Shown here: piece by piece, positions 1,102 to 30,760 of the stretch | How positions within the stretch are numbered: the first letter of the stretch is position 1 | Layout of the letters: each line of letters starts with the position of its first letter | Assembly: GCF_030028105.1 (NCBI RefSeq) | Contig: NC_092375.1 | Span: 54,287,130 to 54,351,129 of the forward strand | Source of the DNA: Mobula birostris | Lineage: Eukaryota | Length of the DNA: 64,000 nt | Reading direction: 5' to 3' | Translations under genes and position numbers: made by a program | The notes under the pieces: generated by a model | The model's database searches: none | Told to the model about the DNA's origin: nothing | Seen by the model: the letters and a program-made list of their open reading frames with translations, nothing else

Positions 1102-1222
1102 CTTTTTTTAGCTTCTTGTGTTCTTATTCCAGTGGAAACACAACATTAAAAAATTATAGAAATTGCCAGTGGTCCTAAAATAATCCAAAAATAACGTTCT
1201 GTTCTAAATTCTGATGCATGTG
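1102..1222 (-). CDS. CD200-like: CD200/OX-2-like gene, exon 4 (membrane anchor); in-frame TAA at 1148-1146
   Basis: Acceptor ttctttttttgcttttcag| and donor AG|gtaagg. In the phase-1 frame it reads (A)HASEFRTERYFWIILGPLAISIIF*CCVSTGIRTQEAKK. The other two frames stop early and show no hydrophobic segment. Confidence 0.7.
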
Positions 1223-2289
1223 CTGAAAAGCAAAAAAAGAAGTATTAAATAATTGAAAATAGCAGATTAACCTTTTCATTTTCAATTGCAGAACAAATTT
1301 AAGTCCGGAAGATTGTGAAATGTCATTCTTTTTCTGAAACATACAGAGCATATTTGTTTCCTCTGACTTATTTTCCTGGCATTTTGAAGCGTCTCAAAGG
1401 AATTTCAAGGGAATTGCAGCCAGTTTTATGTTGAAATTTGCAGCTCTCTGTTGAAATTGGAATGAATTAGTCTAATGGAGGGGAGGATGTTTAACTAGCA
1501 CCATTAGGGGAAAAGAGGACAAGTTCAGAAGGGATGATGTGAACAGCACAGAATGGAACTGGCAGGAGATATGGAATCAGAGGCAAGTGAAGAGGGGAGA
1601 AAGATGTAGGGGGATTTGGAAATTCAAGAGTTGAGTTTCAAAACTAGAGGCAGTTGAAATTAATGGGTCAGGTCATCTATCCATCTGTGATACTGAATCA
1701 GTTTTTCTCTCTCAGTACAATCTGATCTGTTGAGTATATTCTGCAGCCCTTCAGTTTTTGACATTTACATTCCGTTGTCTGTGATTCGCTCTCTTTACTG
1801 CCGTCATTTCATGATTTTTATGAGAAAAGGACCATGTTATTTCTCTCCCTAAAGTTTCCATTAACTCATCAACTTGATTATGTTGTTTCCAGTTGATCAA
1901 TAGGGCAACTTTGGCATCATCCTTACAGAGATATAATCTTTGTCAGAACCAGAATCAGATTTATTGTCAGTGACACAAGTTGTAAAATTAGTTGTCCTAT
2001 CCAATAAGCCCTCCCCTACCCCATCCCATAATTTAATATATATATTTTCTCTCCCTTGCAGTTCTGACTTTAAGGTCTGTGACCTGAAACATTAAATATG
2101 TTTCTTTTTCTCCCCCCCAAATACTGTGTGGCCTTCTGCTCCCAATGGCTGCTTGGCCTCTTGCTCCAACTGTCAGAGTCGCTGCTTCCCACACTGGCCT
2201 CATTTGTCACCCTGGAATCCACAAAGCTGAAGCAGAAGCCAGTTGTCCTTGATGCTGAGGTGTGACCAAAGAAGAACATGAATATTGGA

Positions 2290-3650
2290 AAAAAAAGTAG
2301 GAAAACATGAACCTGCAGACAGCTTAGCCTAACATTAGTCATGAAGAAAATGATAGATACTATTAAAAAGAAATGGATATCATTACACTTCGAAAATATC
2401 AATGGGATTACACACAGACAACACAGATTTTTGGAAGGAAAGTTATGTTTGACAAACCCACTGGAGGTTTTGAGGATGTAGCTGTTAGGATTGATAAGGG
2501 GAAAATCAATGGGTGTGATTCACCTGGTCCTTAGAAAACCTTTAATAAGTACTGGGAACAATGTATTGGCACAAATTAGTAAACAGAAAATAGAACAGGA
2601 ATAAATAGATGGACAGCAAATAAAATGGTGAATGCTGTAATCCAAAACAAAAATAGAAATGTTGGAAGTACGCAGCCAGTCAAACAAAATCTGTAGAAAG
2701 AGACGCCAGTTAATGTTTCAAATCAAGGATCCTTCCTCATAATAAGTGGGACTTCTGAGTGCCAGGTGCCATGTATATTCACATATTGGGTGAGGAACCA
2801 AACATAATATTTCAACGTATGCTGGTGACACTGAACCACATTGATGGGAGGATGCAAAGAGGCTTCAAGGCAGCTGAAGTTGATGGAGTGAGTGGACAGT
2901 ATCTTACTAGGTGTGGTATAATATGGATAAATGTTTTCCATTCAGCAAGAAAACAGAAAGACATGTTAAATGGTTTTAGATTGGGAAGTGTTGAGGTAGA
3001 AAGAAACTTGGGTATCCTTGTACACCAATTACAGAAGGTATCAACTAAATGCAGCAAGTATTTAAGAATGCAAAGTAGTTTAGCCTTGAAAGCAAGAGGA
3101 TAGAGTACAGGAACAAGGATGCCCTGATACAATTCTACAAGACCTTGTTGAAACTGCATTTAGGACCTTGTCTACAGTTTTGGGTCTCCTTAACTAAGAA
3201 ACAATACACTTGCCATAGAGGGAGTGCAGTGAAGGTTAACGTAGGGACTGCTGTAATGAGGAGATATTAGGTTAACTATGTTTGTATCCATGGTAGTACA
3301 GAAGAATAAGAAGAAACCTAATTGAAATGCTGACAAGGCAAGATAGATGGCAAGCAAGAATGTGTTCCTTGGCTGTGGGTTGTGAGGAGTTCCAGTCTCA
3401 GGATAAGGGCTGAGGCACTTGAAACTGAGATGAGGAAAAATTTCTTCACTCAGAAGATGATGAACCTGTGGAATTCACCAGCATGAAGGGCTATACAGGA
3501 AAGGTCATAAATATATTTTAGAAGTAGTGAAAGAAAATTCTTAATGCTAAAGGCATTAAAGGTATTGGGAGAGAGCAGGAATCTGATATTAAGATAATGA
3601 TTAGCTGTGTTTCTATGGAATGGTGGAGAAGCCACAGAAAGGCTGAATGA
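2290..3650 (+). mobile_element. Decayed CR1 LINE (RT region and 3' end)
   Basis: Degenerate SLTxV / GKLCLTN / VDKG motifs, then the typical CR1 C-terminal RT and 3' tail; many stops. Confidence 0.75.
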
Positions 3651-3825
3651 TCTACTACTCTTAATTTACTGGACCCTGTGCATTTGTCATAATTGAGATG
3701 CCTGAAATATAACTTTTCTGCAAGATCTTTCAAAGATTATAGAGGCTGATGCCTAAAGTTTGCAAATGCCCAGGGCAGCTCGGTTATTCTTCAAGATAAA
3801 TTTCGATTTCCTTTACTGATGTGAG

Positions 3826-4235
3826 GGTCTCCGCTGGTTGGGAATGACTATGGATGTTGCATCCTAGCTATCAACATAGTTGATATGCAAGCCAGGATAG
3901 CACGATATGGAGAACAAGCTGTTGTTCATGCAGTAGGCCCCCTCTCTCCATGCAGCTGATGAACTTACAGGAATGGCAGAGACTAATACGGCTTGATAAC
4001 AGGAACAGCATTGCAGGAGTTGCCAGTCGACATTGAACACAGCACAGGGTTGCATTAGAGATCCCAGCTCCAGAATTTTTCTTGGAGCTATTCCCGAAGG
4101 CTTCCCCAACAGTTGTTATAGCTGGAAGGCAGCAGAGGTTTGAGATCAGAGTTTCCCTTCTCCCAGATAAGCTGTCAAGCACAGCTGATAAGTCCCATCT
4201 GCCCTGGTACTGATGAAAGTGATACAAAGTGTTGC
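3826..4235 (-). repeat. Inverted copy of the repeat at 275-845
   Basis: Reverse complement aligns to about 500-800. Confidence 0.7.
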
Positions 4236-5439
4236 CTTTATCGGACAGCTTCCAAAGCCTCAGACAGCAACAGTGACATTTTGATAGTTAAGGAAGCTTC
4301 TTGGAGAAAAAACATAATAATGACCATGTAGTTAGTTGAGATTAATTTTTGTGTCTACTGTTAAATAACAAAATGACACTTCCACCTAGAACCTCTAAGA
4401 AGATTGCTGCTTGACACATCTGCTCTTCATGGAATACTTTTAAAACCAATAATTCAGCCGAAGAACATGTCATACTTTTCAGATTGCTCGGGGAGACAAG
4501 CTCTATGATTGCCATATGATTTTGGGGTTCCAAGCAGCAGAAACAAGATACTGCAGATGCTCTGAATCTAAAATGAGGTTAAATGTTGATGCAGATCCTC
4601 AGCAGGTCAGGTAGCAAAGACAAAAAATCAGAGTTTCAGTTTTAGTCTAAGGAGCTTACACTAGAATAAGACAAAAAATGACTCTTCCATTTCTTCAGTC
4701 GATTCTGTCTTTCATCCCTTCTTCAGATCTTCAGCTTCTTCTTTGAGACCTTGAATAGTCCATCCTCAACAAAGGCCTCAGCTTCAACCACACATTTCTA
4801 TATTACAATCATTTCAAGCTCAAAATGATACCAAGAACTTCTTCCACTGCCTACACTTCCAGGTGAAGTTCCCTTTATTCAGGAGACTTCAACCAGAGCA
4901 TCGAACTATGGGAACATGGGAACATCAGTAGCCTCCCAAGCTTTTCTGGCATTTAAAGGGATGGCCATGCTTATCCATTGACCTATAACTTCAAATAAAC
5001 TTGGTTACCAAAAATCTACCAAACTCAGTTTTAAAAATAACAAAATACCAAAGAACACGTGATTTTTATAAAATGATATCACAAGCTTCTTCAACTCTTT
5101 GCCTATGCACGCATTTCCTAACTTCACTTCTGACAGGACCCCTAATTGTTTAGACCATGCCACATGTCCAAGACTTCCCATTTAGTCAAAAAGCTGCACT
5201 CCATTTTCCCCGTTATTAACTTGGAAGATTTGATCAAATCATAGCTTAACTTTCTAAGTTTTACAAACGATAGATAACACAACATATTTGTGTAATTTCT
5301 AGTGAATTTCTTGTTCATGTATGATTTTGGCAAATTTATAGTGCATTCTACCAAAGGTCAATACATTATTTTCAAGGTGTGGCACCCAGAATTGCTCACA
5401 CTACCTCTGTACTAATCCAATTAGGGATTTCCATAGCTT

Positions 5440-7760
5440 AGTCATAGAGTCACAGAGCACTAAAGCACAGAAACAGGCCATTTGGCCCATCAATCCTGTG
5501 CCAAACTGTCATTCTGCCTAGTTCCAATGACCTGCACCTGGACCATAGACCTCCATACCCCTCCCACTCATATGCTTATCCAAACTACTTTTAAATGTTG
5601 AAATCCACTACTTCAGCTAGAAGTTTCACACACACACACACTCTCTCTCTACACCCTCTGAGTGAAGAATTTTTCCCTCATGGCTCCTTAAATATTTCAC
5701 CTTTCACCCTTAACATATAACCTACTTCCAGGCTTGCTTATCTTCAGTGGAAAAAAGCCTGCTTGCAGTTACCATATCTATAAATCTCATAATTTTGTAT
5801 ATTCTTTCAAATCTTCCTTCATTCTCCTACAGTCCCGGGAATAAAGTATGGTACTAAACTATTCAACCTCTACAGGTAACTCAGATCAGTAAGTCGCAGC
5901 AGCATCCTCGTAATATGTTTTTTCGTACTCTTTCAATCTTATTAAAATCTTTCCTGGAGGTAGGTGACCTAAACTTCACACAGTACTCCAAATTTGGCCT
6001 CACCAACATCTCATGCAACTTCAGCATAACATACCAACTCCTGTATTCAATACTTTCATTTATTAAAGCCAACATGCCAGAAGCTCTCTTTACGACCCTA
6101 TTTACATGTGACACTACTTAATGCATTAATTTCATCTGCCATTTTTAGCCCATTTTTTTCCAGCTTTTATACATCCCACTGTAGGCTTTGATAACCTTCT
6201 TTGCTGTCCGCTATGCTCACATTCTTAATGTTATCCACAAATTTGCTGATCCAGTTTGCCACTTTATCATCCAGATCACTTAGTTGACAAAGAACAATGG
6301 ACCCAGCATTAATCTCTGGCACACGACCAGTAACAGAAAGGCTACCATCTACCCTGGCGTCTTCTGCAAAGTTAAGCTTGAATCCAATTTACTACTTCAT
6401 CCTGAAAGGAGGGATTTTTTCAGCCAGAGTGGTGAGTCTGTAGGTTGAGGTCAACTCATGGGTATATTTAAAGCAGAAGTTGATAGATTCCTGACTGGTC
6501 AGGGCATCAAGGGATATGGTGAGAGGGCAGGTGTATGGCGTTGAATGGGATCTGGGATCAGCCATGCTGAAATGCCGGTGTAGACTCGATGGGCTGAATG
6601 GCCTAATTCTACTCTCGTGTCTAATGGTCTTATGGTCTAATGCCAAGCAACTGATACTTCTGGACCAGACTTTGTCAAAGGCCCTGGCTATCCAAATACT
6701 TACACATATATCCATTCCCTTACAATACCTTCCTATAATTCACCCACTATTCAGGTCAGGCTCATTAGCCTATAATTTCCAGGCTTATTCCAAGAGCCTT
6801 TCTTGAACAATGAAAGAACATTAGCTATCCTCCAGCCCTCCAGACCTCCAGCCCCTCACCTGTGGCTAAGGATGCTTTAACTATCTCTGGCTGGGCCTCT
6901 GCAATTTCTGCACTGGCCTCCCATATAGACCAAGAGGACGCCTTATCAGGCCCTGGGAATTACCTACCATAATTTTCCCTCAAGACAGCAAGCACGTCCT
7001 TCTCTGTAATTCAGATACAGTCTATGAATTCAGTAATGTTTTGCCTCAGTTCTATAGTCTCTGCATCCATCTCCCAAGAAAATAAATAATCAAAAATTCT
7101 ATTTAAAATCTAACACACTCTCCATCTCTTTTGTATAAATTACCACACTGATCTCATGTGGACTAATTTGGTCCATTGCTATCCTTTTGATCTTAATATA
7201 ATCTGTAGAAGCCCTTGGGATTCTCCTTCACATTGTTTGCCAGAGCAAGCTAATGCCTTCTTTTAGCCCTCCTCATTTTCCTTTTAAGTGTTCTCTTGCA
7301 TTCATTATACTCTTCAAGCATCTCATTTGTTCCTTGCTGCCTATACTTGCTGTGCTAAAACTTCTTCTTCTTCTTAACCAGGGCCTCAATATCCTTTGAA
7401 ACCAAGGTTCCCTAAACCCGTTAGACTTGCCTTTCATTCTTACAAGGAACATACAAACTCTGCACTCCCAGTATTTCACTTTTGAAGGTCCCCCATTTAC
7501 CAAAGATCCCTTTGCCAGAAAACAACCTAACCCAATCCACACTTGCTAGATCCTTTCTGATGGCATCAAAATTGGCTTTTCTCCATTTAAAATCTCAAAC
7601 CAAGGGCTAGTCCTATCCTTCTATGTGATTATCTTCAAACTAATATAATTATGATCACCAGATCCAAAGTGTTCGCCTATACATATTTCAGTCACCTGCC
7701 CTGACTCTTCTCTAATAAGAGATCCTGTACCACACTCTCTCCAATTGGAATCTCTATAGA
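5440..7760 (-). mobile_element. Decayed CR1 LINE, interrupted by an opposite-strand CR1 tail at 6388-6640
   Basis: ORFs 5881-6114 (LVRPNLEYCVKF) and 6392-6715 (ARAFDKV), plus CR1 ORF2 remnants out to 7760. Confidence 0.75.
6388..6640 (+). mobile_element. CR1 3' tail insertion
   Basis: GGGTATATTTAAAGCAGAAGTTGATAG...GGCCTAATTCTACTCTCGTGTCTAATGGTCTTATGGTCT. Confidence 0.75.
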
Positions 7761-7764
7761 TTGA

Positions 7765-9920
7765 TTAAGACCATAAGGCCATGAAAGATAGGAACAGAAT
7801 TAGGCTATTCGGTCCATTGAGTCTGCTCCACCATTCCATCATTGCTGATTTATTATCCTTCCCAATCCTGTTCTCCTGCCTTCTACCTGTAACCTTTGAC
7901 GACCTTACTACTCAAGAACCTATCAATCTCCACTTTAAATATATCAAACGACTTGGCCTCCACAGCCGTCTGTAGCAATGAATTCCACAGATTCACCACC
8001 TTCTGGCAAAAGCATTTCCTCCTCATAGTTGTTGTAAAGGGACATCCCTCTATTTTGAGGCTGTGCCCTCTGGGCCTAGACTCCCGCACAAGAGAACATC
8101 CACTCGTTCAAAGACTTAAAATATTCAGTAGGTTTCAATGAGGGAGCCCCTCATTCTTCTAAACTCCAGTGAATACTGGCCTAGAGCCATCAAACTCTGC
8201 TCATATATTAATTCTTTCATTCCTGGGATCATTTTTGTGAATATTTTCTGGACCCTCTCCAATGCCAGCACATCTTTTCTTAGACAAGGGGCCCAAAACT
8301 GCACACAATGCTCCAAGTGCAGTCTGACCAATGCCTTATAAAGCCTTAGCATTACATCCTTGAGTTTATATTGCAGTCCTCCCGAAATGAATGCTGACAA
8401 TGCATTTGCCTTCCTTACCACCGACTCAACTTGCAAGTTAATCTTTAGGGAACACTGCATGAGTTCTCCCAAGTCCCTTTGAACCTCTGAATTCTGAACT
8501 TGCTCCCCATTTGGAAAATAGTCCACACTTTTATTCCTTCTACCAAAGTGCATGACTATATTCTTTCCTACACTGTATCAATCCTCCACTTCATTGCCAA
8601 TTCTCCTAATCCTTCCAAGTCCTTCTGCTGACTCCCTGCTTCCTCAGCAGTACCTATCCCTCCACCTATCTTTGTATCGTCCGCAAACTTAGCCAGCAAA
8701 ACATCAATTTCAATCTCCAAATCATTGACATATCAAGTGAAAAGCTATCCCAACACAGACCCCTGTGGAACACTGCTAGTCCCAGGCAGTCAACACATAT
8801 AGGCACCCTTTATTCTGACTCTGCCTTCAATCAGTCTTCTATCTTTCCTACAATGCCATGGGCTCCTATCTTGTTCAGCAGCCTTGTCAAAGGCCTCCTG
8901 AAAATCCAAGTAAACAACATCCACTGACTCTCCTTCGCCTATCCTGGCTGTTATTTCCTCAAAGAATCCCAGCAGGTTTGTCAGGCAAGATTTCCCCTTA
9001 AGGAAACCATGCTGACATTCACCATATTCCTCCAAGTACTCCAGGTAACTCCTTAATAATGGATTCCAACATATTTACAACCACTAATGTAGGGCTAACT
9101 GGTCTATAATTTCCTTTTTTATGCCTTCCTCCCTTCTTAAAGAGTAGAGAGACACTTGTGATTTTCTAGTCCTCCAGAAACATTCTAGAATCTAACCATT
9201 CTTGAAAGGTCATTAAAAATGCCACCACAATCTCTTCAGGTACCATTTTCAGAACCCTGGGGTGTAGTCTGTCTGGTCAAGCTGTCTCACCTACTTTCAA
9301 ACGTTTCAGCTTCTCCTCAGTAAGAGCAACCATACTGACATCTGCCCTCTGATGCTCTCAAATTGTTGGCGTACTGCTGGTGTTTTCCACAGTGAACAAA
9401 ATACTTTTTAAGTTCATCTGCAATTTTTTCTCCCCCATGACTACATCTCAGGAATCTTTTTCCAGCAGTCTGATATTCATTCTTGCCTCTCTTTTACTCT
9501 TTACATATGTGAAAAAAATCTTGTGGTATCCTTTTTTATATTTTTTTGGGCAGCTTACCTTAATATATTAACTTTTCTCTCCTTATAGTTGCCTTCAGTT
9601 GGTGTTTAAAACCTTCCCAATTCTCTAACTTCCCACTGAGCTTTGCTGTATTATAAGCCCTCTCTTTTGCTCTTATGCTGTCATCCACTTCCCTTGACAG
9701 CCTCATCCTCCCTTTAGAATACTTCTTCTTCTTTGAGATGTATTGATTCTGTGACTTCTGAATTGCTTCCAGAAACTCCACCCATTGCTGTTCTGCTGTC
9801 ACCTCTGCTAGCGTCACTTTCCAATCAGCTTTGGCAAGCTCCTCTCTCATGCCTCCGTAATTCTCTTTACTCCACTGTAATACTGATACATCTGATTTTA
9901 ACTTCTCACTCTCAAACTGG
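7765..9920 (-). mobile_element. Decayed CR1 LINE ORF2 (RT) with 3' end at 7765
   Basis: ORFs 8790-9035 (QHGFLKGKSCLTNLLGFFEEIT..VDVVYLDFQEAFDK), 8125-8553 (MHFGRRNK...LVRLHLEHCVQFW) and 9560-10090. Confidence 0.9.
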
Positions 9921-10139
9921 TAGTACAGGATTTTTATCTGAGGTATGGAGGATTCAAATGTGAGATCTATTTGCTGCAGTTTTGGTAAATTTTCAAATTG
10001 TAAATACCATTTTTGTAATTTTATGGTTCCATCTACACATATCTGCATTTTTAAATTGTATATGTGGCTTTTTAATCCCATAAACTTCATTATTAATAAA
10101 CCACAGTGAATACTTTATGGGTCATTATTAACCATCGTC

Positions 10140-11460
10140 TGCCTTTAGACAACCTGTCTACCAGAGTCATTGTCAGAGTTGTACAGAATAGAAACAGGCC
10201 CTTCAGTCTACCACAATGTATTCTCACCATCATGTCTATTTATAGTCATTCCATTTGCCTGCATGAATTCCATATCTCTCTCTCCCTGGCTCATTTAAGT
10301 ACCTGTCAAGATGTCTCATATATATATTTCATCACCTCCTCTGACAGATCATTCCATTTACCAACTATTCTGGGTGTGAAAAATGGCCTCCTCAGATCTC
10401 TTTTAAACCTCCTCTTGGTCACCTTAAATCTACGCTTCTGATTTTAGTCATTTCCACCACAGGAAACAGACATTGCTATCTATGCTATTTATGCCTCTCA
10501 TAATTCTACATACCTCTAATCATGTCTCCTCCCAGCTTGCTACAGTCTAGGGGAAACAGACCCAGTGTATCCAATTCCTTCTGCTAACTCAAGTTCTCCA
10601 CTCCAGGCAACATAATTGTGAATCTTTTCTGCAGCCTCTGTTTTAATCGTATCTTTCCTGTAGCACGCTGACCAGAACCGCGCATAATATTCCAAGTGCA
10701 GACTAAGCAAACTGTTGTACAACTGACACCTGAAGTGCCAACATCCCTATTCAGTGCCTCAGCCAATGAATCTAAGCATGCCATATGCCTTTTTCACTAC
10801 CCTGTCTACTTGTATTCCCATTTTCAGGGAACTATGTCCACCATCTGCACAATCTCTGTGTCCAAGTTAAATTCCATCTGCCATTCCCTTTCTCAGTTGA
10901 TCTCTATCCTGTTGTAGTTTCACCTTCTTCAGTATCAATGACTCCACCATTTTTTTACGCCATCTACAAACTTACTCAATCACGCTACCTACATTCGCAT
11001 CCAAATCATTATGTGACAAACAACAGAGGATCCAGCAATGATCCCTGCAGCACACTACAGATCACAGGCCTCCCATCTGGAAAAGCAACCCTACACTATC
11101 ACTCTCTGCTTCCTCATCTATTGAAACTTCTCACTCTGAATCCATGTGTTCTAACCTTCTGTCACAGTCTACCATGTGGAAGACTTTGCTACAATGTCCA
11201 TGCAGAAAACATCTACTGCTGTGCTCACGTGTCTCTTGGTTACATCTTCAATAAAAAACTATTTAATTTGTGAGATGTGATTCTGCTAATCAGTCCTCAT
11301 CCTTCCAAATGCTAATAAACTCTTCCTCTGAAAATCCCTTCCAATAACTTTCCCACCACTTATGCAAGACTCACTTGCCTGCAGTTTGCTGAAGTAACCC
11401 TGCTGCTCTTCTTAAATAAAGGCACAATATTAACTATCCTCCCGTGCCACAGCTATGGCT
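10140..11460 (-). mobile_element. Decayed CR1 LINE
   Basis: HLEYYARFWSACYRKD motif (10540-10722) and a CR1-type tail near 10140-10200. Confidence 0.7.
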
Positions 11461-11975
11461 GACAAAGATACCAAGATCAGGGTCCTGGTGAGTGGGTAGG
11501 AAGTGGGAAACTCAAAGTCTTTGCAGGAGGGGTTGGAAGGTGGAATTGTAGGGAGCTTGGCAAGTATTAACTGATGAGCTAGAGACTAAACCTGTGTGAT
11601 TTCAGAATTGTCAAATTGTTGACTTTTGGAGCACTTCTCTAGGCACGTAATTCTCCATTAACTTCAGTGAAATGAATTTTAGAAACTTTAAAGTATTTTA
11701 GAAGTTTTAAAGTATAACTCCAATAATCCTCAGTTTTGTTTGTTTAAATGATACAGACTGGGATGAATTACTACCTCTGACCTTTTTGCAAATTTACTAT
11801 AGGTAATTAATTTGCCCAGGTCTTTGACTGAAATGAAAACTCATTTTCTCCCTCCATATTTATTACCCTATCTGCTAAGTGTTTTCAGTATTGTTCAAAA
11901 ATCTAATAATTCATTGATAGAAATGTTGTCCATGTCTTTGTTTCATTTTTCTGCTCATTAATGTATTATACTTAC

Positions 11976-14924: not shown

Positions 14925-15089
14925 CTGTGAAACAGAAATAAAATAGAATATTGTAAAGAAAACTAATCAACCATTTCACAAATATTTATTCCCAAAACAC
15001 TCAAAGGTATGCTAATTATACTGGACGTACATATGTCTTGGATGAGAATGCATGTGTCTGATAGCATATTTACAGAAGAGGTAAAAATT

Positions 15090-15190: not shown

Positions 15191-15199
15191 AAAATTGTG

Positions 15200-16330: not shown

Positions 16331-16334
16331 CTTC

Positions 16335-19345: not shown

Positions 19346-19354
19346 GTAAATAAA

Positions 19355-20585: not shown

Positions 20586-22544
20586 TGAGTTCAGGAAACT
20601 AGGAATTGTTTTGTTTCTGTAAACTTGAAAAGGTCATAAGTAAATACAATAATAGGTTTCTGATTTATTGGAAGTCCTGATTGTACAACCAATGCACATA
20701 AATAACATGACAAGAGGCTCACTGTGCTATCGGCTCCTAGCATACCCCCATCATCATTCTTGAATATGGAATATTAGCTACCATTCTCAACTTTTCATTC
20801 TCTCCTCCATGCTTAACACTAGTACAAAGTATCCATTCAGGACACCACACATATCTGCTGGCCCTTCACAAGGACTTCCCTTTAGTTCCCAAGGTGATTT
20901 CCTCTTTTCCTAGCTACCCCCTTTGCTTCTAAAATACTATGGAAGTTTATGGAACTCTCTTTGATTCTGTTTATCTCAGAAGTGAATTCACTGGCTTCCC
21001 ATCTGAGAGGCAGGAATTATCCCCCCCAAAAGCGGCTTTCTACTTTTCTAATTTAGATTGTTGTTCTGTTCTCAATCCTTTCTGTCTGAAAGTACCACAA
21101 TTTCTTGGTACTTTCAAATCTTCTCATTTAGAGAATACTGGAGGATAGCCAGCAGTTTAAACTAACAAACACTTGTATTTTATTTATAGAAAGAAAATGA
21201 CAATGTTTCTTGACATAAACACTCAGTCTTTCTGGCAGCTTCCTGAATGAAACATGTAGCATTCAGTTAGTCACACTTAAATACTTTAACGTCTCATAAT
21301 ATTCCACATGTTACACCCCTGCTTGAGAGTGAAAAACAAAAAGTAAAGATCCAAGTCTAAAACATTTGTCTGCCTCAGGCTTTATCATAGCACAAGGTCC
21401 TCTAGATATTTGGGTTGTTGGCTCCATACTCGTTCCACTGATAAAGGAATGCCATCTTCATTGTGAATTAGTTTGATGCGTGATGAGGTGTGTGGAATCA
21501 CTGCTGATCTCTGCCATACCCAGCATCATTCTGATGGTTGGCCTCACCTCACTGGGTCTCCACATTTAGTGGCATCATATTTGTTGCAACTCTGTGCCTG
21601 TCCTGCCCCCCAGTTGCTTATTTACACTTTCTTGGGGTTCTGACTTTACTGCTCTAATCACCTGTTAATTGCATCAACACTATCTTCCCACTTTTGCCTT
21701 GCTATATCTTGGTCAGTCACATCTCTGTATTGTAAAACTTTCAAATAAGCTTTCTGATATGCCGCAATAAAATTCACAGCAATGTTCAGCAACACAAGAC
21801 ATTCTTGCAGATGCTGGAAATCTTGAGAAACACGCACAAAATGCTGGAGGAACTCAGCAAGTTAGGCAACATCTGTGGAGGAGAGTAAACAGTCAATGTT
21901 TCAGGCCACTGTGCCTTGGTTTCACCTTCTCCTAACCAGCTTTCACATAGCTTTGATGTACATTGAAGTCATAGTGGTACAGCACGCAAACGGAACCCTC
22001 AGCCTAAATGGTCATGCTAACCCCAGCGTCCTCCCGTCTAGTCCCATTACCTGCATTTGGTAAGAATCAATGACAAAGGTTGGTTTCAACTGCATTGTCT
22101 CAAGGTTGATAGCTTGCTTCAGGGCAACATTAACTGAGCAGAATTTTCAAGTTGATGTATCACTGGGTTGCCCTTGGACCAATATTTTGAAGCAGTATAT
22201 CTAATGTGTGTTCATTCAGCATATACACTAATTTTCTTCGGTGAGCAAATGCTGCCCTACCCATCCTATTTTCTTATGGTCTTTCCTAGGATGGCTCAAT
22301 TGTGAATCTAATCTTGTGCTGAACTGGGAGCCTGAATGTGACCTATAGCAAACTATAGCGTTTATTGTTCATTTAATTCATTGCAGCTGCTTTATATTTT
22401 ACTACACTGTAAGTTTTAAAACTGATTTCAAATGGATTGACCCTATTGCCATTGCTGTAATTTTTGATGAACTTTGTATAACATCAGAGTATTACAACAG
22501 AGTAAGTTTCAACAATCTACTGCTTGCCATATGTACTGGTTTAA

Positions 22545-25500
22545 ACTAATATGGCAGGGGGATGTGAATCAGGAGTATAGAGCTGACGAGGAGCCTGCAG
22601 GTTTACAAGTAGATGACGGATGTAACATGAATGTAAGGAAGGACAAGCCAATGAATGGGGCAAATGCAGACAGAGCAGAGTGTTAAATTGGACCACAGAG
22701 GCAAAATTCAAAAGGCCAAAGAATGCAGGACTGAAGGTGCTATATTTAAATGCGCTTAGCATTTGGAGTAAGGTGGAAGAACTTGTGGAGCAATTAGAGA
22801 TTGGTCGGTATGACGTTGTGGGCATCAATCGTGGCTGACAGAAGGCCATAGTTGGGAGCCTAACATCAATGGATATACTTTGTAACAAAAGGACAGGCAG
22901 GAAGGTAAAGGTGATGGTGTGGTTCTGTTTGTAAGAGATGGAATTATATCTTTAGAAAGAGGTGACATCGGGTCAGAGAATGTCAAATCTTTGTGGGTGG
23001 AATTGAGGAACTGCAAGGGTGAAAAAACCATTATGGGAATCATATATAGGCCTCCAAATAGTAACCAAGATGTGGGGTTGAGACTGCAATGGGAGCTGGA
23101 AAAGGCATGTAATAAGGGTAATGACACAATTGTAATGGGGGACTTCAATAAGCAAGGGGATTGGGAAAATCAGATTGGTATTGGATCACAAGAGAGGGAA
23201 TTTGTTGAATGCCTACAAGATAGCATTCTAGAGCAGCTTGTGCTTGAGCCTATTCAGGGAAAGGCTTAGATTGGGTGTTGTATAATAACACCAATCTTAT
23301 TAGGGAGCTCAATGTAAAGGAACACTTAAGAGCAGTGATAATAATATGATTGAATTCATACTGCAATTTCAGAGGGAATAGCATAAGTCACATGTATCAG
23401 TATCGCAATGGAATAAGGGGAATTACAGAGGCATGAGTGAGGAGCTTTCCCAGGTGGATGGGAGAAGGATAGGGGTGGGGATGATGGTAGAGCAGAGATG
23501 GCTGAAGTTTCTGGGAATAGTTCATAAGGCACAGGAGAGATATGTGTCACAGAAGAAGAAATTCTCGAATGGTGGGGGTAGGCAACCATGGCTGACAAGG
23601 GGAATTAAGGACTACATAAAAGCCAAAGAAAGGGCATATAAGGTAGCAAAAGTGAATGGAAAGTTGGATGATTGGGAAGCTTTTACAATCCACCAAAAGG
23701 CAAATAAAGGCTATAAGAAGGGAAAAGATGAAATATGAGGGTAAACTAGACAATAACATACAGCAGGATACCAAAAGTTTTTTCAGTTATATAAAGAGAA
23801 AAAGGAAGATGAATCTTGATATTGGACCACTGGAAAGTGATGCTGATGAGGTAGTAATGGGAGGACAAAGAAATGGCAGACGAACTTAATGGGTGCTTTG
23901 CATCTGGCTTCACTGTGGAAGACACTAACAGTGTGCCAGAGGTGTGAGAGTGTCAGGGAGCAGGAGTGAGTGCCATTGCTATTACAAACGGAAAAGGGCT
24001 AGACAAACTCAAAGGTCTTAAGGTGGATAAGTCACCCGGACCAGATGAACTACATCTCAGACTCCTGAGAGAGTCCTGAGGAGATCATGGGTGTAATGGT
24101 TATGATCTTTCAAGAATCAGTTGACTCTAGCATGGTCCCAGAGGACTGGAAGATTGCAAATGTCACTCCACTCTTTAAGAAGGAAGGAAAGCAAAGGAAA
24201 GGAAATTATAGGCCAGTTTGCCTAACCTCATTTCTTGTGAAAGTGTTGGAGTCTATTATTAAGGATGAGGCTTCGGGATACTTGGAGACTAATGATAAAA
24301 TAAGCCAAAGTCAGCAAAGTTTCTGTACAGGGAAATCTTGCCTGACAAATTTGTTAGATTTCTTCGAAGAAGTAGGGTGAACAGAGGAGAGGCAGTGGAT
24401 GTCACTTACTTGGATTTTCAGAAGGCATTTGGTAAAGTGCTACACATGAGGCTACTTAGCAAGATAAAATCCTACAATGTTACAGGAAAGATATTGGCAT
24501 GGATAGAGGAATGGCTGACAGGCAGGAGGCAGTGAGTGGGAATATAGGGGGCCTTTTCTGGTTGGCTGCTAATGACTAGTGGTGTTCCTCAGGAGTCAGT
24601 ATTGCGACCGATACTTTTCACTTTGTTTATCAAGGATTTGGATAACGGAATTGATAGCTTTGTGGCAAAGTTTGAGGATGATACAAAGATAGGTGGAGGG
24701 GTAGGTAGTTCTGAGGAAACAATGCAATTGCAGAAAGACTTACGACAAATTGGAAGAACGGGCAAAAAAGTGGCAGATGGATGACAGTGTTGGGAAATAT
24801 ACGAGAATGCATTTTGGTGAAAGGAACAATAGTGCAGACTACTATCTAAATGGGGAGAAAGTTCAAACTCAAAGGTGCAGAGGAGTCCTCGTGCAAGACT
24901 TCCAGAAGATTAATTTACAGCTTGGGTCTGTGGTAAAGAAAGCAAATGCAATGTTGACATTTATTTCAAGGGGAATAGAATATAAAAGCAAGGAGATAAT
25001 GCTGAGGCTTTATAAGACACTAGTCAGGGCTGCACTTGGAATATTGTCAACAGTTTTGGGCCCCATATCTCAGAAAAGATATGTTGACATAGGAGAGAAT
25101 CTAGAGGAGATTCATGAGGATGATTCCAGGAATAAAGGGGTTAATATATAAGGAGCGCTTGGCAGCTTTGGGCCTGAACTCACTGGAATTTAGATGAATG
25201 CAGGGGAATCTCATTGAAACCGACTGAATGTTGAAAAGACTAGATAGGGTGGATGTGGAGAGGATGTTTTCTATGGTGGGAGTATCCAGAACTAGAGGGC
25301 ACAGCCTCAAAATTGAAGGGTGACCTTTGAGGACAGAGGTAAAGAGGAAATTTGTTAGCCAGAGAGCAGTGAATCTGTGAATCTCTACAATGGAGGCCAA
25401 GTCCATGGGTATATTTAAGGCAGAAGTTGATCGTTTCTTGATTGGTCAAGGCATCAAAGGATATGACGAGAAGGCAGGTGTATGAGATTGAGTGGGATTC

Positions 25501-25565
25501 GGGATCAGCCATGGTGGAATGGCAGAGTAGACTCAACGGGCTGAATGGCCTAATTCTGCTATGTC
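22545..25565 (+). mobile_element. Near full-length CR1 ORF2 pseudogene (APE endonuclease + RT + 3' tail)
   Basis: Successive fragments: LWVELRN..GIIYRPPNS..VMGDFN, WKIANVTPLFKK..NYRPVCLTS, VDVTYLDFQKAFGKV, VPQESVLRPILF..KFEDDTK, MHFG.., then the CR1 tail; multiple frameshifts and stops. Confidence 0.93.
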
Positions 25566-27864
25566 TGCTATTGCTTTACTAATGTTTTACATCTAAATAC
25601 ATGGATTTTTCCTATATTCTTTGTTGCAAGGTGAAGTTATCAGTATCTCTCCTCTTCACCTACTCTAATATAAAAGAGAAAGAAAAATAGTCTTTCACTA
25701 TTAAATTTATTCTTGCACTCCACATCTCATCTACCCCATGAATTTACAATGTCTACTTAGTTGTGTACTTTTTGTGGAAATGAATTTACAGTTCACATCA
25801 ACCCACTTTTTCCTTTACAGAAGACATTACTTTTTTAGCCATTAATATTCTGGTCCATTATGCTTATAGGTGATCTTGGGCAAATTTCCCCTTAGCTTTT
25901 ATCATGCGCTAGTTCTCTCTAGTGATTAGAAAATAAAATAGGTGCTACATAAATTGATAATTCATTCATAGTTAGTTTTACAGTTGGCTGAAGATGACTT
26001 TCCACCCCCTCTTTTCACCCGTGAAGAAGCTTGATCCGCTAAAAGCCATGTATCACTGCTAATTTCATCCCAGATAATGATGTTTCCTGACAGAACTGGT
26101 ACAAAAATGCAGTCTGAAACCCCTCAGATAATTAAAATTGACTTATTTCTCAGATTTTAGAAGTGATTGATTTTTAAAATCGTACACTTAATTGTGTAAC
26201 TTTCAGCTTTCTAGATCAATATGGAATTAACCCAAACTATTTGCAACAATTACTTCTCATTTACATTTCATTTTTTAGTTTCTTCAAAATCTGTTAATTT
26301 ACTAGTATTTTGATCCCATATAAGAAAGAAAATGCTTTTGGAGCAAAGCACCTGGCTGAATTCAGTTTAGAAATAAAAAAATTACAAGAAGCTAATGTTA
26401 AATGTTAAGAAAAATAATCACTTTGTTGCGCAGTTGGTCTCAAGCATCTCTCTTCCTATAGAATCTCTGCTTTTATTGGTACAAAGTCTTAAAATCAGTT
26501 GTTAAAATAAAATAATTTTTAGGTGTTCTACCCTTGTGTCTACCATAATTTTTATGTGTATGTGAGATATCATTGACTTTGCTTATTGTTCCATCCTCAT
26601 TTCCAAGAAAATAAAAGCCCGTTGTGGTTCCTTAATGTTCTGTTCCAGAAATTAGTGTCTCATTATTTCAGTAAATTCTCCCTCAGATGCAACAATTGCT
26701 CACTCACATTTTGCATTTTGATCCCCTTGAGGAAGACTGAAATCCCCTAGTACAATAGTTTCCAATTTGGGAGTCTGCTAAATATCGCTAAGGTTCCAAA
26801 AAACTTTATTATTATTGAAGTAATTTAGTTAGTTAGAAAGTTCACGAAGTATGAAATAATTAAAAATGAACTTGTTACAACATCTGCCCTACCCACTGCC
26901 AACAGTTGCTGTAATTCTCTGGGACAGTCCAAATTCTTATCAGGAGTGACCCATGACTACATCAGGTGCCTATGTGGGTGGGGGGCAGACACAAATTTTA
27001 CACAGAGTGTGGAAGTAGTACTTTCCTTCAAGAAGAGTGAAAACTAATGACTGAGAATGGGTCCTGATGACCTGCCACACTGTTACCTTAATGTTTCCAT
27101 GAAGTAAGTTCAGTCCTTCACTTTAAATGCCATCAACTGAAGTAGTACCATTTTCATCATTCAATTCCATTGTAATTCAACTGTCTCAGATGAACATTGA
27201 TTCCCATCTCCTGCTTTATTTCCCTGATGCTTCTTAACAAGCACTGAATATTGAAAATGTATTTCTTAACCATCAGCCATTATTTTCTTCCAAACAGGTT
27301 GTTATTTCTACAACATTTTTTACTTTTCTAAGCATCAGTAATTCCAGCTTTAATTCTTTACACTCTCTACATTAATGAAAGTTCACTTCAGGTCCCAGCA
27401 CTAACCCTGCGGTATACCATTGATTCGTGACTTTCAGTCAGAAAATCAACGCACCTTGTGGTACACCACTGTTTACAGACTTGCAGTCAGTAAGATATCA
27501 TCTGTCTAACATCACCAGACTAATTCTGGATCCCATGTGGCCTGACTTTCTGGACCAGCCATTCATGCAGGGCCTTGTCAAAAGTCTGTGTATACAACAT
27601 TTACTGCCTTAAATTCACCAGTCTCAAAAAATCTGATTTGTGAGGCAGGATTTCTCATACACAAAACCATTCAGATCCCGCCTAAATATTCTCTGTCTTT
27701 CCAAGTGATTGAAAGTCCTATTCGCAAAATGTGGATACTCATTTGTTTTGGCTACAAATAAATTATGAATGTATTTGAGTATATCATCTTTAAATCTATT
27801 AAGAAGCTAATCACAGATTCCTAATACACTGTTCTATTTCTTATTGTTATCTCATTTTCACATA

Positions 27865-28340
27865 TTTAAAATTAGAGGTAGTTTGACACTGCTCTGTCCA
27901 TGACCACAAGAAACTGCAGAGAGCTGTGCATTTATTTCAGCACATCACAGAAACCAGCTTCCCCTCGACGGACTCTGCCTACACTTCTCACTGCCTCAGT
28001 ATAGAAGTCAGTATAAAGAACAACCCACCAACCTCAGACATTCTCTCTTTTCATTATTCCTATCAGGTAGAAGATACAAAAGCCTTAAAGCATACACCAC
28101 TAAGCTCAAGGAAAGCTTCCATCCCACTGTTGGAAAACTATTGAACAGTTCCCTACTATTATAAGAATGGCCTTTGACCTCACAATCTACCTTACAACCT
28201 TGCACTTTATTGTCCAATTGCACATGACTTTCTCTGTAATTGTTACACTTTATTCTGCAATCTGCTGTGGCTGTATCTCAATGCACTGTTGTCATAAATT
28301 GATCCGTATAAATGGTGTACAAGACAAGCTTTTCTTTGTA
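27865..28340 (+). mobile_element. Rex1/Babar-type LINE 3' end
   Basis: CCTATCAGGTAGAAGATACAAAAGCC..GGAAAGCTTCCATCCCACTG, similar to 17990-18060. Confidence 0.65.
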
Positions 28341-29469
28341 CCTTGGTACATTCACCTATTTCATTTTTGTGATAAGCCTGGTTTCATCTATAAGTTGCAG
28401 TTTAAAACTTAAAGATATCAAATGAACATGTAGAACGAGCTGCCAGTGCAAGTGGTGCATGTGAGCTTGATTTTATTGTTTAAGAGAAGCTTGGATAGGT
28501 ACATGGATAGTAGGGCTAGCGAGGGCTATGGTCCCAGTGCAGGTTGATGGGAGTAGGAAGCTTAAATGGTTTCAGCTTGGACAAGATGGGCCAAAGGTCC
28601 TCTTTCCGTGCTGTATTTTTCTATGACTCTGTGACTCTATCAAGGATAGCTTTGAAAAATAACACAAAACCTAGTCAGGTAGTGTAGGCTTGCGGTTATA
28701 TTGTTGTTGAATGAGTCATTTGAATGTGAGATCACAAAGATAACAAAATTTTAGGCAACATTTGCAGTCAGACCATTGTTTACTCCCAATAGCAGACAAA
28801 AAAAAAGTATTTTCAAACATTTCCCATCTGTGAAAATTCTAGTGCTTCCCCATTAAGCCAGTAAGCTTCTAACTCCTGGACAGGCATTGCAGTTTTGAGG
28901 ATAGACTACACTTAGTTTTCATTCAGGGTGGGAACACAAAATCTTGCTAAGCTTGGCATTTCTCTTCTAGGCAGTCCTTCAGGGTGCGGGTGGCTTGTTT
29001 CTACTCAAATTCTGAGGGTTATGTGGTCTGAGGTGTAATATGGCTTAAGAGGCCATTGTGGGACCTACTGATTCTGCTGGAAGGGCTTACTGGGATGGGC
29101 GGGTGGGTAGTTTGATGTCGATGCTCTCCTTCTGCTATTTTTTTACCAGGTTGTTGGCTGCTCCTGTCAAATAACCCTGCTTTCTGAATGGTCCTTCTCA
29201 ACTAGAAGTGGTCATTGGCCAGAGGTTCCCATAAGTCAAGTGAATTGTTGCATTTCTTCAAGGAGATGTCCTTGAGAACAGATTGAATTCCCTCCACTGT
29301 GCACCCAGCACTTTCTCCCCATGATAGGTTGGGGTGTCTGTTTCAGGAAGAATGTAGTCGTCATGCCAATCAGGTAGCCTGTCCAACAGAACGGATGGAA
29401 TGCATTAGAAATATTTTGCAAAAGTAGTTACTGGTGTTATTCCACCCCTCCCCTTGCTTTGAAGTGGCT

Positions 29470-30760
29470 GTTGTAAGCTGTCTGTAGCTTAGAGCGACGC
29501 TGGATGGCAGGGCTCGCTGCTGCTTAGTGGAACCTAGCACCAGGTTCGATTTCCTGATCCTCATGGGCTCTTTCCCTCAGCAAGGCGGCACTGGTTCACT
29601 GAAAGCAATGCCCGCCTTCAGAACGTTATAACTCTCGATTTACTGTAAGTATTACACATTTCCCAGGACTTTACTATCGGAGCGCAGTGTTGGCAGTGGA
29701 GCGTTGCAGTTGTTAGTATACGGCTCGTTCACTCACTTTCTTCGGTGAACAACTTAGCAATAATTTGGAAATCACAAGTATTACCTGCACATTACAACTT
29801 GACTGAAACGGTGGCAACCTTGATTCTGGGACAGAACTTTCCCTATTTGCTCTGTACATTATTCGATTCCAACAGTAAGCTTGTCTGAGTAACAGGCAAC
29901 AAGAAGCTACATATCCAATCTCCCATCTGAACACCGACAATCGGCAAACTAAGAGAAATGCTTATCGTAATACGTTGCAGAAATGCATATCATTCAGGGT
30001 CTTGACCCTAGCCTCTGCAAATGCTTTTCCCTTTCCAATACGCACCTCCCCACAACGAAATTGAGCACCAGGTATAGAGTGCAGAACAGACTATATTGGC
30101 GTACTCTTTAAAGAAACAAATCGGCAAGCCGATGTCGAATGCATCAGTTTGAAACATTATTTTCAATGCACTTACTATTGTTATTTCAGCTCTTTACACC
30201 GTTGCATTCTTTTTTAATTAAACTGGCTGCAAAATACAACTCAAACGCGTTGTTTTTTGCATGCCTTTGTGAAGCTGTATATTACTATACTAGTCTCTTT
30301 CCTTTAACATTCCTCCTCCTTTCTCCTCATCCTCAGCTGACCCCGATTTCCCAGTTCACTATCCTGTTAAGCCATTCGGCAGAACATACTGAGCTAAAGA
30401 AAACGTTAACGATTCTCACCGTCGGCCAGAGAGACCAGCAGAGCGAGCGCAAGGAGTTTCATTTGGAGATTGTCAAGCGGTTCGAAGATCCGGTTCCAAT
30501 TCGCCGCAGAAGGTAAACTATTTTTCCGGGTAAGATCCACTGAGCGCAGCCGGCTGGATGCCTGCACTTTATTGGGAAGCTATTTCGATAGTGAATTTGG
30601 CCCAGAACCAATTTACGCACACTCTGTTAAAATTACCGACATCCACATGCCTTTTATTTCAGTTCCCGAAATGAATACTAAATTGCTTGAAGGAAGTAAC
30701 GTGCACGCCCCTTTCTCAATTTACATCAATAGAGGAATATGAGTACGTGTGCGTGTGTCC
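29470..30760. promoter_or_regulatory. CpG-enriched, repeat-poor region around the first exon (probable promoter of the CD200-like gene)
   Basis: CpG density visibly above the depleted background; contains the ATG exon; TATA-like ATAAAAG on the minus strand near 30651-30657, about 190 nt upstream of the ATG. Confidence 0.55.
30420..30462 (-). CDS. CD200-like: CD200/OX-2-like gene, exon 1 (signal peptide)
   Basis: CCAAATG AAA CTC CTT GCG CTC GCT CTG CTG GTC TCT CTG GCC GAC G|gtgaga = MKLLALALLVSLAD(A). The phase-1 donor joins CT of exon 2 to give ...LADA-QSPIV, a plausible cleavage site. Confidence 0.82.

What the first reader, a model, noticed from the sequence alone, without database searches (positions are those of the whole stretch)
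1102..30462. CD200/OX-2-like gene with tandem V-V architecture (second V exon missing from the ORF track)
Seen: four minus-strand exons with canonical splice sites and compatible phase 1 assemble into SP-V1-V2-anchor, 261 aa to the first stop. V2 is an evident paralogue of V1, sharing FSC/FTCTT.L..I.QV.W.KL.GQ.EENI, CYQCLF and GKTCL.V. Known: canonical CD200 is IgV + IgC2 + TM + short tail. Inference: an exon duplication gave a second V domain in place of the C2 domain, a possibly lineage-specific immune-ligand architecture. No C2 exon was found in the non-repeat parts of intron 3, but a diverged one could have been missed.
Basis: partly seen in the sequence, partly recalled or inferred. Interest (0 to 1): 0.7.

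Follow-up and report, generated by a model that had tools for sequence, protein, structure and literature searches.

The report
Two-V-domain CD200-like gene in rays
This manta-ray gene for a CD200-like immune ligand really has a duplicated V domain where the usual C2 domain sits; all sampled rays and many sharks share this, automatic annotation already has the gene, and in rays the protein ends in a tail that looks like a GPI-anchor signal.

Summary
Four minus-strand, phase-compatible exons splice into a 261-aa protein: signal peptide, V1, V2 and a short hydrophobic end. It is letter-for-letter the NCBI model 'OX-2 membrane glycoprotein-like [Mobula birostris]'. Both V exons are V-set domains. 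Both carry the extra F-G cysteine pair that is the hallmark of CD200. No C2 exon exists anywhere in the window.

The architecture is not specific to this species. All 6 batoids and all 9 galeomorph sharks sampled have V-V. Two squalomorph sharks and the chimaera keep the canonical V-C2-TM. The leader, V and anchor exons correspond across these forms, and V2 sits where C2 sits. V-domain trees do not unite ray and shark V2, so the cause is either parallel duplication or gene conversion; this stays unresolved.

The in-frame TAA is real and old. It is identical in the DNA of four batoids. It follows a frameshifting indel relative to the shark TM exon. It leaves a 14-15-residue hydrophobic C-terminus that looks like a GPI signal (inferred, not shown).

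Verdict: a real, conserved variant of CD200. The gene model is already annotated. I found no description of the domain swap or the anchor change in the paper library. Interest is moderate.

The parts
30420..30462 (-). Exon 1 (coding part): ATG plus signal peptide, 14 codons and 1 nt, phase-1 donor GTGAG
   Evidence: The product equals P0001. The leader aligns with all 15 elasmobranch orthologues.
14925..30419 (-). Intron 1, 15.5 kb, with retroelement ORFs
   Evidence: One search lists reverse-transcriptase-like ORFs at 22919-25151 (+). No Ig exon was found by HMM.
14589..14924 (-). Exon 2 = V1, a membrane-distal V-set domain. It has the canonical B-F cysteines (C38, C107) and the CD200-type extra pair (C104, C122). 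It has no N-glycosylation sequon.
   Evidence: Pfam V-set 1.5e-12. PDB matches: nectin-1 D1 4e-16 and CD200 1.7e-11. Family V HMM 4e-54. Sequon count.
12306..14588 (-). Intron 2, 2283 bp. No conserved leader exon that would give V2 its own transcript.
   Evidence: One search found only loose chance candidates and no copy of exon 1. V1/V2 DNA similarity covers the exon plus about 20 nt of flank.
11976..12305 (-). Exon 3 = V2, a membrane-proximal V-set domain and paralogue of V1. It has the same four cysteines (C150, C217; extra pair C214, C232) and four N-glycosylation sequons.
   Evidence: Pfam V-set 5.2e-12. The alignment to mouse CD200 (4bfi_B) puts both extra cysteines in register, and nectin-1 lacks both. 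Family V HMM 3.5e-51. Sequon count.
1223..11975 (-). Intron 3, 10.75 kb and rich in transposable elements. No C2 exon.
   Evidence: C2 HMM and tblastn were negative. The same intron is only about 0.9-1.1 kb in two skates and is also without C2. RT-like ORFs are listed.
1149..1222 (-). Exon 4, coding part: a stalk with small residues (T-A-H-A-S), an 8-residue polar spacer and a 14-residue hydrophobic C-terminus
   Evidence: It is homologous to the stalk/TM exon of shark CD200.
1146..1148 (-). Stop codon TAA directly after a T6 run. It is conserved in batoids.
   Evidence: TTT TAA is identical in the DNA of Mobula, Pristis, Rhinoraja and Leucoraja. All six batoid proteins end at the same alignment column.
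1102..1145 (-). Post-stop part of exon 4 (44 nt) plus a conserved donor GTAAGG just beyond it (from 1101). This is the remnant of the second half of the TM and the basic tail of the ancestral exon, readable in the -1 frame.
   Evidence: The block CCACTGGAATAAG is identical in Mobula and both skates, and Pristis differs at one base (CAACTGGAATAAG). The run AAAAAAAGGTAAGGAAA is shared by all four batoids. The flanking intron is not conserved.

Best explanation
This is the batoid form of the CD200 (OX-2) gene, a cell-surface immune-regulatory ligand. Its membrane-proximal C2 exon has been replaced by a tandem duplicate of the V exon. The protein is signal peptide, V1, V2, short stalk and a C-terminal hydrophobic tail. 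V1 evolves more slowly and carries few or no glycans. I infer that it is the receptor-binding domain, as the N-terminal V domain is in mammalian CD200. V2 evolves faster and is heavily glycosylated. I infer that it mainly acts as the spacer that keeps a two-domain height above the membrane. In the batoid ancestor, a frameshifting indel in the TM exon created a stop after 14-15 hydrophobic residues and removed the rest of the TM and the basic tail. The resulting C-terminus has the layout of a GPI-attachment signal, so the ray protein is probably GPI-anchored. Galeomorph sharks keep V-V with a full TM and a tail of about 12 aa. Shown here: the exons, the domains, the cysteine hallmark, the absence of C2, conservation across species, the exon-level correspondence, and the age of the stop. 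Inferred: receptor binding, the spacer role and GPI anchoring.
For: The spliced product is identical to the NCBI model P0001. Both exons are V-set domains. Both V domains have the F-G cysteine pair, aligned with mouse CD200 and absent from nectin-1. PMC3664923 says this disulfide is conserved in CD200 orthologues and is unusual in Ig domains. V-V is conserved in 15 elasmobranch species. V-C2-TM is found in Heptranchias, Pristiophorus and Callorhinchus, with homologous leader, V and stalk/TM regions. The loci show V2 in the position of C2 and no C2 in rays or Stegostoma. Mean pairwise identity among five of the batoids is 80% for V1 and 70% for V2. The V2 stem branch is 0.47 against 0.20 for V1. 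V2 has 2-4 sequons against 0-2 for V1. The stop is identical in four batoid genomes, and all six batoid proteins end at the same column. The tail has small residues at the candidate omega and omega+2 sites, a 6-8-residue spacer and 14-15 hydrophobic residues running to the very end. The stop lies 44 nt before a conserved donor (38 nt in Rhinoraja by my count on the alignment), inside the usual NMD-safe distance, which I cite from general knowledge. The AlphaFold model shows two beta-sandwich domains with mean pLDDT 76. Its best PDB fold matches are the two-V ectodomains of JAML and CD226. The nearest language-model cluster is Thy-1, a GPI-anchored V-set protein; this is only a weak lead.
Against: There is no transcript or protein evidence here. 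The NCBI models are predictions. By sequence alone, nectin-1 and nectin-3 score as well as or better than CD200 against solved structures. The CD200 assignment therefore rests on the cysteine hallmark, the two-domain architecture of the shark and chimaera orthologues, and their naming. No synteny with CD200 neighbours was tested. No GPI predictor or assay was available. Leucoraja has an Arg three residues from the end of the tail. Both V exons are symmetric (phase 1-1), so single-V isoforms are possible. A separate canonical V-C2 CD200 elsewhere in ray genomes was not excluded by a whole-genome search; it was only absent from protein searches.
Confidence: 0.75

Rival explanations
1. V1 and V2 are alternatively used exons (mutually exclusive or skipped). 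The main products would then be single-V proteins, and the V-V model would be a minor product or an artefact of prediction.
For: Both V exons are phase 1-1 and of near-equal length (336 and 330 nt), so skipping either keeps the reading frame. NCBI lists several isoforms in related species. Squalomorph isoforms differ at the 3' end.
Against: The V-V model is predicted independently in 15 species. Batoid V2 has diverged strongly from V1 and has its own conserved sequons, which is not the usual pattern for interchangeable exons. A single-V product would halve the height of a ligand whose relatives all have two domains.
Confidence: 0.1
2. The gene is not the CD200 orthologue. It would be a separate nectin/CD226-like two-V paralogue with a different partner, and a canonical CD200 would exist elsewhere in ray and galeomorph genomes.
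For: Solved-structure searches rank nectin-1 first, and CD226 aligns over both domains. NCBI names several orthologues nectin-1-like or CD226-like. A second V-V copy exists on the same Mobula chromosome (P0010), so the family does duplicate.
Against: The F-G cysteine pair is shared with CD200 and absent from nectin-1. The closest non-V-V relatives are shark and chimaera proteins with CD200 architecture. They share the stalk/TM sequence (for example AHTSPN..WI..LVAILI) with the V-V genes. A V-C2 profile search returned no ray or galeomorph protein with a C2-set domain. There is no nectin-type third domain or long tail.
Confidence: 0.1
3. The TAA is a nonsense allele, a pseudogenising lesion or a homopolymer assembly error. 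The true product would then be a normal type I membrane protein, or nothing.
For: The stop sits right after a T6 run. The -1 frame downstream still reads like the rest of a TM plus a basic tail.
Against: The TTT TAA codon pair is identical in four independently assembled batoid genomes from three orders. All six batoid proteins end at the same column. The ectodomain ORF is intact, with all cysteines and the tryptophan conserved.
Confidence: 0.03

Closest known systems
CD200 / OX-2 membrane glycoprotein (mammalian; structure 4BFI; PMC3664923)
   Same: It has an N-terminal V-set domain with the unusual exposed F-G disulfide cysteines in register. The ectodomain has two Ig domains. There is a short stalk. 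No signalling tail is present.
   Different: The second domain is a V-set duplicate instead of C2. Rays have no complete TM or cytoplasmic tail and end in a GPI-signal-like tail. Binding to a receptor was not tested.
Chondrichthyan canonical CD200 (Callorhinchus NP_001279700; Heptranchias XP_067848935; Pristiophorus isoform X1)
   Same: The leader, V domain (49-60% identity to Mobula V1) and stalk/TM exon are homologous. Exon order and spacing are the same.
   Different: These genes have one V and one C2 exon and no second V exon in the locus. They have a full TM plus tail.
Galeomorph shark V-V proteins (for example Carcharodon 'OX-2 membrane glycoprotein isoform X1', Stegostoma 'nectin-1-like')
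   Same: They share the leader-V-V-anchor architecture and lack a C2 exon.
   Different: They have a full TM and a basic tail of about 12 aa. V1 and V2 are 65-90% identical to each other, with mosaic identity that suggests gene conversion. Their V2 does not group with ray V2 in trees.
CD226 (DNAM-1) and JAML
   Same: Their ectodomains are made of two V-like Ig domains. They are the best PDB fold matches to the model. The profile aligns over both CD226 domains.
   Different: No cytoplasmic signalling tail is present here. The CD226 and JAML matches show only 17-22% sequence identity. I did not check their cysteines against the CD200 F-G pair. They are receptors rather than a CD200-type ligand.
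Thy-1 (GPI-anchored V-set glycoprotein)
   Same: It is a small V-set surface glycoprotein that ends in a hydrophobic GPI signal. It is the nearest cluster by language-model features.
   Different: Thy-1 has a single domain. No specific sequence homology was shown. The match is only a lead.

Membership tests
CD200 (OX-2) family | N-terminal V-set Ig domain with the canonical B-F disulfide | tested here: met
   Pfam V-set is above cut-off for both exons. The B- and F-strand cysteines are invariant in 15 orthologues.
CD200 (OX-2) family | Extra F-G disulfide in the V domain. PMC3664923 says it is conserved in CD200 orthologues and unusual elsewhere. | tested here: met
   The G-C-Y-x-C ... T-C-L pattern is in both V1 and V2. 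It is aligned in register with mouse CD200 and is absent in nectin-1. This is a sequence-level test only; bond formation was not shown.
CD200 (OX-2) family | Membrane-proximal C2-set domain | tested here: not met
   There is no C2 exon in the window or in three other batoid loci by HMM or tblastn. A V-set domain occupies that position.
CD200 (OX-2) family | Single-pass TM and a short tail without signalling motifs | tested here: not met
   The ray proteins stop after 14-15 hydrophobic residues. Galeomorph orthologues do meet this feature.
CD200 (OX-2) family | Orthology to recognised CD200 genes (exon correspondence, synteny) | tested here: inconclusive
   The leader, V and stalk/TM exons correspond to shark and chimaera CD200, and V2 sits where C2 sits. 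Flanking-gene synteny was not tested, because no called neighbour lies within 10 kb.
CD200 (OX-2) family | Binds the inhibitory receptor CD200R through the V domain | not testable with these tools
   This needs a binding assay.
Nectin / nectin-like family | V-C2-C2 ectodomain, TM and a long tail with an afadin- or PDZ-binding end | tested here: not met
   There are only two domains, both V-set, and no tail. V-domain similarity to nectin-1 and nectin-3 is high and reflects the shared superfamily.
CD226 (DNAM-1) | Two Ig domains plus TM plus a cytoplasmic tail with tyrosine signalling motif | tested here: not met
   The two-V layout is shared. There is no cytoplasmic tail in rays and only a basic tail of about 12 aa in sharks.
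GPI-anchored proteins | C-terminal signal: small omega and omega+2 residues, a polar spacer of 5-10 residues, and a hydrophobic tail running to the C-terminus | tested here: inconclusive
   The pattern is present by inspection in all six batoids: A-H-A or D-G-S, then 6-8 polar residues, then 14-15 hydrophobic residues. No predictor or PI-PLC assay was available.

The most novel reading that the evidence does not exclude
The ray gene may make two products from one mRNA. Termination at the conserved UUU UAA would give the GPI-type form. An occasional -1 slip of the P-site tRNA on the U-run in front of the stop would give a full transmembrane form. The U-run is U6 in Mobula and both skates. In all four batoid genomes examined, the -1 frame after the U-run continues with a Leu codon. 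It then reads a hydrophobic stretch and a conserved W-N-K basic tail. It ends in its own stop in three species and runs open to the donor in the shark phase in Pristis. This post-stop block is conserved while the flanking intron is not. Separately, and more likely (about 0.4), the C2-to-V swap may have arisen twice, once in rays and once in galeomorph sharks.
Probability: 0.05. Interest if true: 0.8.

Novelty: new variant of a known kind. Interest (0 to 1): 0.45.

Why it matters
CD200-CD200R is a conserved inhibitory checkpoint of myeloid cells, and its ligand is normally V-C2-TM. Here a whole vertebrate group has swapped the membrane-proximal domain for a copy of the binding domain. Rays have also changed the anchor type through a fixed frameshift. 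The distribution is V-V in rays and galeomorph sharks but V-C2 in squalomorph sharks and the chimaera. That does not fit the species tree with one simple event. It therefore gives a clean case for studying exon duplication and loss, gene conversion and possible parallel evolution in an immune ligand. It also allows a test of whether only the height of the second domain matters, not its fold. The practical value is modest, because the gene is already annotated. The value lies in correct naming (the models are variously called nectin-1-like, CD226-like or OX-2-like) and in comparative immunology.

Tried and rejected
1. I looked for a hidden C2 exon. tblastn with the Pristiophorus C2 domain and a 157-sequence C2 HMM run on all six frames of the window gave nothing above noise. 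The same was true for the loci of Rhinoraja, Leucoraja, Pristis and Stegostoma. The top window hit, 1942..1754 (-), had E about 1 and was rejected.

2. I looked for extra V exons. Only the two exist. A weak hit at 52243..51992 (-) with E 0.02, inside retroelement sequence, was treated as noise.

3. I looked for a separate leader exon for V2 in intron 2. Only loose chance candidates turned up, and there is no copy of exon 1 or exon 4.

4. I looked for a relic V2 exon in the squalomorph locus, to test an ancestral V-V-C2 gene. None was found in 69.7 kb of Heptranchias.

5. I tested one origin of V2. The full-length tree groups ray V1 with ray V2 (85/74) and galeomorph V1 with V2 (84/83). The AU test rejects an all-V2 clade (p 0.0018). 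Half-domain trees are unresolved (p 0.02-0.03). Lamniform 5' halves are 92% identical against 67-72% in the 3' halves, and Heterodontus V1 and V2 are about 90% identical. Both point to gene conversion, so the number of origins cannot be decided.

6. I looked for codon-position bias in the -1 frame after the stop. The counts were about 3, 3 and 2 changes at positions 1, 2 and 3, counted by hand. That gives no signal of coding constraint, and the sample is tiny.

7. Three literature searches for CD200 in cartilaginous fish or teleosts found no description of this architecture.

8. DNA could not be fetched for the Mobula or Scyliorhinus torazame records because the files were too large. Lookups of P0008, P0164 and P0011, which are shorter isoforms, found nothing on record.

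Full report
**The observation.**
- Exon 1 is 30462..30420, exon 2 is 14924..14589, exon 3 is 12305..11976 and exon 4 is 1222..1102.
- Exons 2-4 have AG acceptors preceded by pyrimidine tracts, and every exon ends at a GT donor. Every junction is phase 1.
- The spliced reading frame gives 261 residues before a TAA at 1148..1146.
- This product is identical, residue for residue, to P0001, 'OX-2 membrane glycoprotein-like [Mobula birostris]'.
- The recorded gene range of that protein in assembly GCA_030028105.1 is 29,317 bp. That is exactly ATG to stop in the window.
- The window is therefore from the giant manta ray or a near-identical genome, and automatic annotation already has this model.
- V1 and V2 are 43% identical. 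They match each other at tblastn E about 2e-24. Both are V-set domains above Pfam's cut-off.

**Is there a C2 exon?** No.
- tblastn with the C2 domain of a sawshark CD200 found nothing in the window.
- A CD200 C2 HMM built from 157 domains found nothing in any frame, with filters off and a best E of about 1.
- A V HMM finds only the two exons.
- In two skates the intron between V2 and the anchor exon is only about 0.9-1.1 kb and also lacks C2.
- Pristis and the galeomorph shark Stegostoma lack C2 as well.
- The 10.75-kb intron 3 of Mobula is long because of retroelement insertions.

**Which family?**
- Against solved structures, V1 scores best with nectin-1 D1 (4e-16), then nectin-3, then CD200 (1.7e-11) and CD226.
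- A profile of the V-V proteins gives the same mix.
- Even a canonical shark V-C2 protein scores nectin-3 and CD200 about equally.
- Similarity to mammalian structures therefore does not decide the family.
- Two things do. First, both V domains carry an extra cysteine pair: one three residues before the F-strand cysteine and one in the G strand. HMMER aligns both in register with mouse CD200, and nectin-1 has neither.
- The CD200 structure paper says this exposed F-G disulfide is conserved in CD200 orthologues and unusual in Ig domains (PMC3664923).
- Second, the nearest relatives outside the V-V group have the CD200 architecture: leader, one V, one C2, TM and tail. They come from Callorhinchus, Heptranchias and Pristiophorus.
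- These relatives are named CD200/OX-2 by NCBI and UniProt. Their V domains are 49-60% identical to Mobula V1, and their stalk/TM sequence is clearly homologous.

**Distribution.**
- V-V without C2 is found in six batoids: Mobula, Hemitrygon, Pristis, Narcine, Rhinoraja and Leucoraja.
- It is also found in nine galeomorph sharks: Heterodontus, Carcharodon, Cetorhinus, two Scyliorhinus species, Mustelus, Stegostoma, Rhincodon and Chiloscyllium.
- V-C2 is found in two squalomorph sharks and the chimaera (taxonomy).
- A profile that includes the C2 domain returned no ray or galeomorph protein with a C2-set domain.
- In the Heptranchias locus the order is leader, V, C2 (1.7 kb after V), TM (8.9 kb later). 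There is no second V in 69.7 kb.
- In Stegostoma, the skates, Pristis and Mobula, V2 lies 1.5-2.3 kb after V1, where C2 would be.
The arrangement is not peculiar to this lineage.
- Tandem CD200-type V domains also appear in gene models of frogs. These are V-V with a hydrophobic end, in Rana, Discoglossus and Hyperolius.
- They also appear, followed by a further stretch long enough for a third domain, in newt and teleost models. I did not check those models for prediction artefacts.

**One duplication or two?**
- In the V-domain tree, ray V1 and V2 group together (85/74) and galeomorph V1 and V2 group together (84/83). Heterodontus V1 and V2 are sisters (96/89).
- The AU test rejects a clade of all V2 domains (p 0.0018).
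- This fits two independent duplications. It would also explain why squalomorphs, the sister group of galeomorphs, still have V-C2.
- Gene conversion is visibly at work in sharks, however. In lamniforms the first half of V1 and V2 is 92% identical and the second half 67-72%. In Heterodontus both halves are about 90% identical.
- Trees from half-domains are unresolved.
- The data do not separate parallel origin from one old duplication followed by homogenisation and loss.

**The end of the protein.**
- All six batoid proteins stop at the same column, 14-15 residues into the hydrophobic segment. The sharks continue with the rest of a TM and a basic tail of about 12 aa.
- At the DNA level the codon pair TTT TAA is identical in Mobula, Pristis, Rhinoraja and Leucoraja.
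- Relative to the shark exon, the rays have a frameshifting indel just before it.
- The stop is therefore neither an allele nor a homopolymer error. It dates to the batoid ancestor.
- What remains has small residues (A-H-A, or D-G-S in Narcine), a polar spacer of 6-8 residues and a hydrophobic tail to the last residue. That is the layout of a GPI-attachment signal.
- I could not run a GPI predictor or an assay, so this is an inference. The nearest language-model cluster being Thy-1 is only a weak hint.
- The stop lies 44 nt before a donor site that is conserved in rays and sharks. If that donor is used, the mRNA should escape nonsense-mediated decay; this rule comes from general knowledge.

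**An unexplained detail.**
- The roughly 40 nt after the stop are conserved among rays, while the intron beyond the donor is not.
- In the -1 frame they still read like the missing half of the TM plus a basic tail, with W-N-K invariant. In Pristis this frame is open to the donor in the shark phase.
- Before the stop, the T-run is six long in Mobula and the skates and four long in Pristis.
- This could be passive conservation of splicing signals in slowly evolving genomes. The few variable sites show no third-position bias, by my hand count.
- A low rate of -1 slippage giving a TM form cannot be excluded. I rate it at about 5%.

**How it probably works.**
- By analogy with the mouse CD200-CD200R complex, the N-terminal V domain would bind the receptor (PMC3664923).
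- V1 is the more conserved domain. Mean identity among five of the batoids is 80% for V1 against 70% for V2. V1 has no sequon in Mobula and V2 has four.
- The V2 stem branch is more than twice as long as that of V1.
- I read V2 as a glycosylated spacer that took over the role of C2, and V1 as the binding domain.
- The AlphaFold model shows two beta-sandwich domains (mean pLDDT 76, pTM 0.52). The linker is modelled with low confidence, so the relative orientation of the domains is not reliable.
- Its best fold matches are the two-V ectodomains of JAML and CD226.

**Novelty and verdict.**
- The gene model is known to annotation pipelines under inconsistent names: OX-2-like, nectin-1-like and CD226-like.
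- I found no paper in the library that describes CD200 in cartilaginous fish or this domain swap.
- It is a new variant of a known kind. It is real, conserved, of moderate interest to comparative immunology and ordinary in mechanism.
The cross-species DNA here supports the TM-to-GPI reading and rejects the other two.

Noticed in passing
not in the window; protein P0010 (XP_072115809, Mobula birostris, same 198-Mb record) and P0009 (Mobula hypostoma): A second V-V copy exists in Mobula. Its V1 is 86% identical to the window's V1, followed by the start of a V2. In M. birostris it is fused by the gene model to an unrelated upstream gene. The M. hypostoma model is a 140-aa fragment with a different C-terminus.
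   Followed up: partly
window 1102-1145 (-), with L002, L003, L005: The post-stop part of the anchor exon is conserved among four batoids. In the -1 frame it still reads like the rest of a TM plus a basic tail, with W-N-K invariant. A T-run precedes the stop.
   Followed up: partly
window 14014-14077 (-) and L001 19979-20042: A 64-nt stretch of intron 2, about 0.5 kb downstream of V1, matches a collinear position downstream of the V exon in Heptranchias (72% identity, E 3e-4). It may be a conserved intronic element.
   Followed up: no
proteins P0005, P0178 (lamniform sharks) and P0177 (Heterodontus): V1 and V2 show mosaic identity: 92% in the first half against 67-72% in the second half in lamniforms, and about 90% throughout in Heterodontus. 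This pattern points to exon-to-exon gene conversion.
   Followed up: partly
window 51992-52243 (-): A weak match to the V-domain HMM (E 0.02) lies inside the region that another note describes as LTR retroelement copies. It is probably chance.
   Followed up: no
window 5881-10090 (-) and 22919-25151 (+): Broken reverse-transcriptase and endonuclease-like ORFs of non-LTR retroelements fill introns 3 and 1. The same intron 3 is only about 1 kb in skates, so the manta gene has been expanded by insertions.
   Followed up: no
L002 21.0-22.1 kb and L003 26.6-27.8 kb (skate intron 2): A direct repeat of about 300 nt (73-74% identity) lies 0.1-0.4 kb after V1 and again 0.15-0.45 kb before V2. It is not collinear with the exon duplication and is probably an interspersed repeat.
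   Followed up: no
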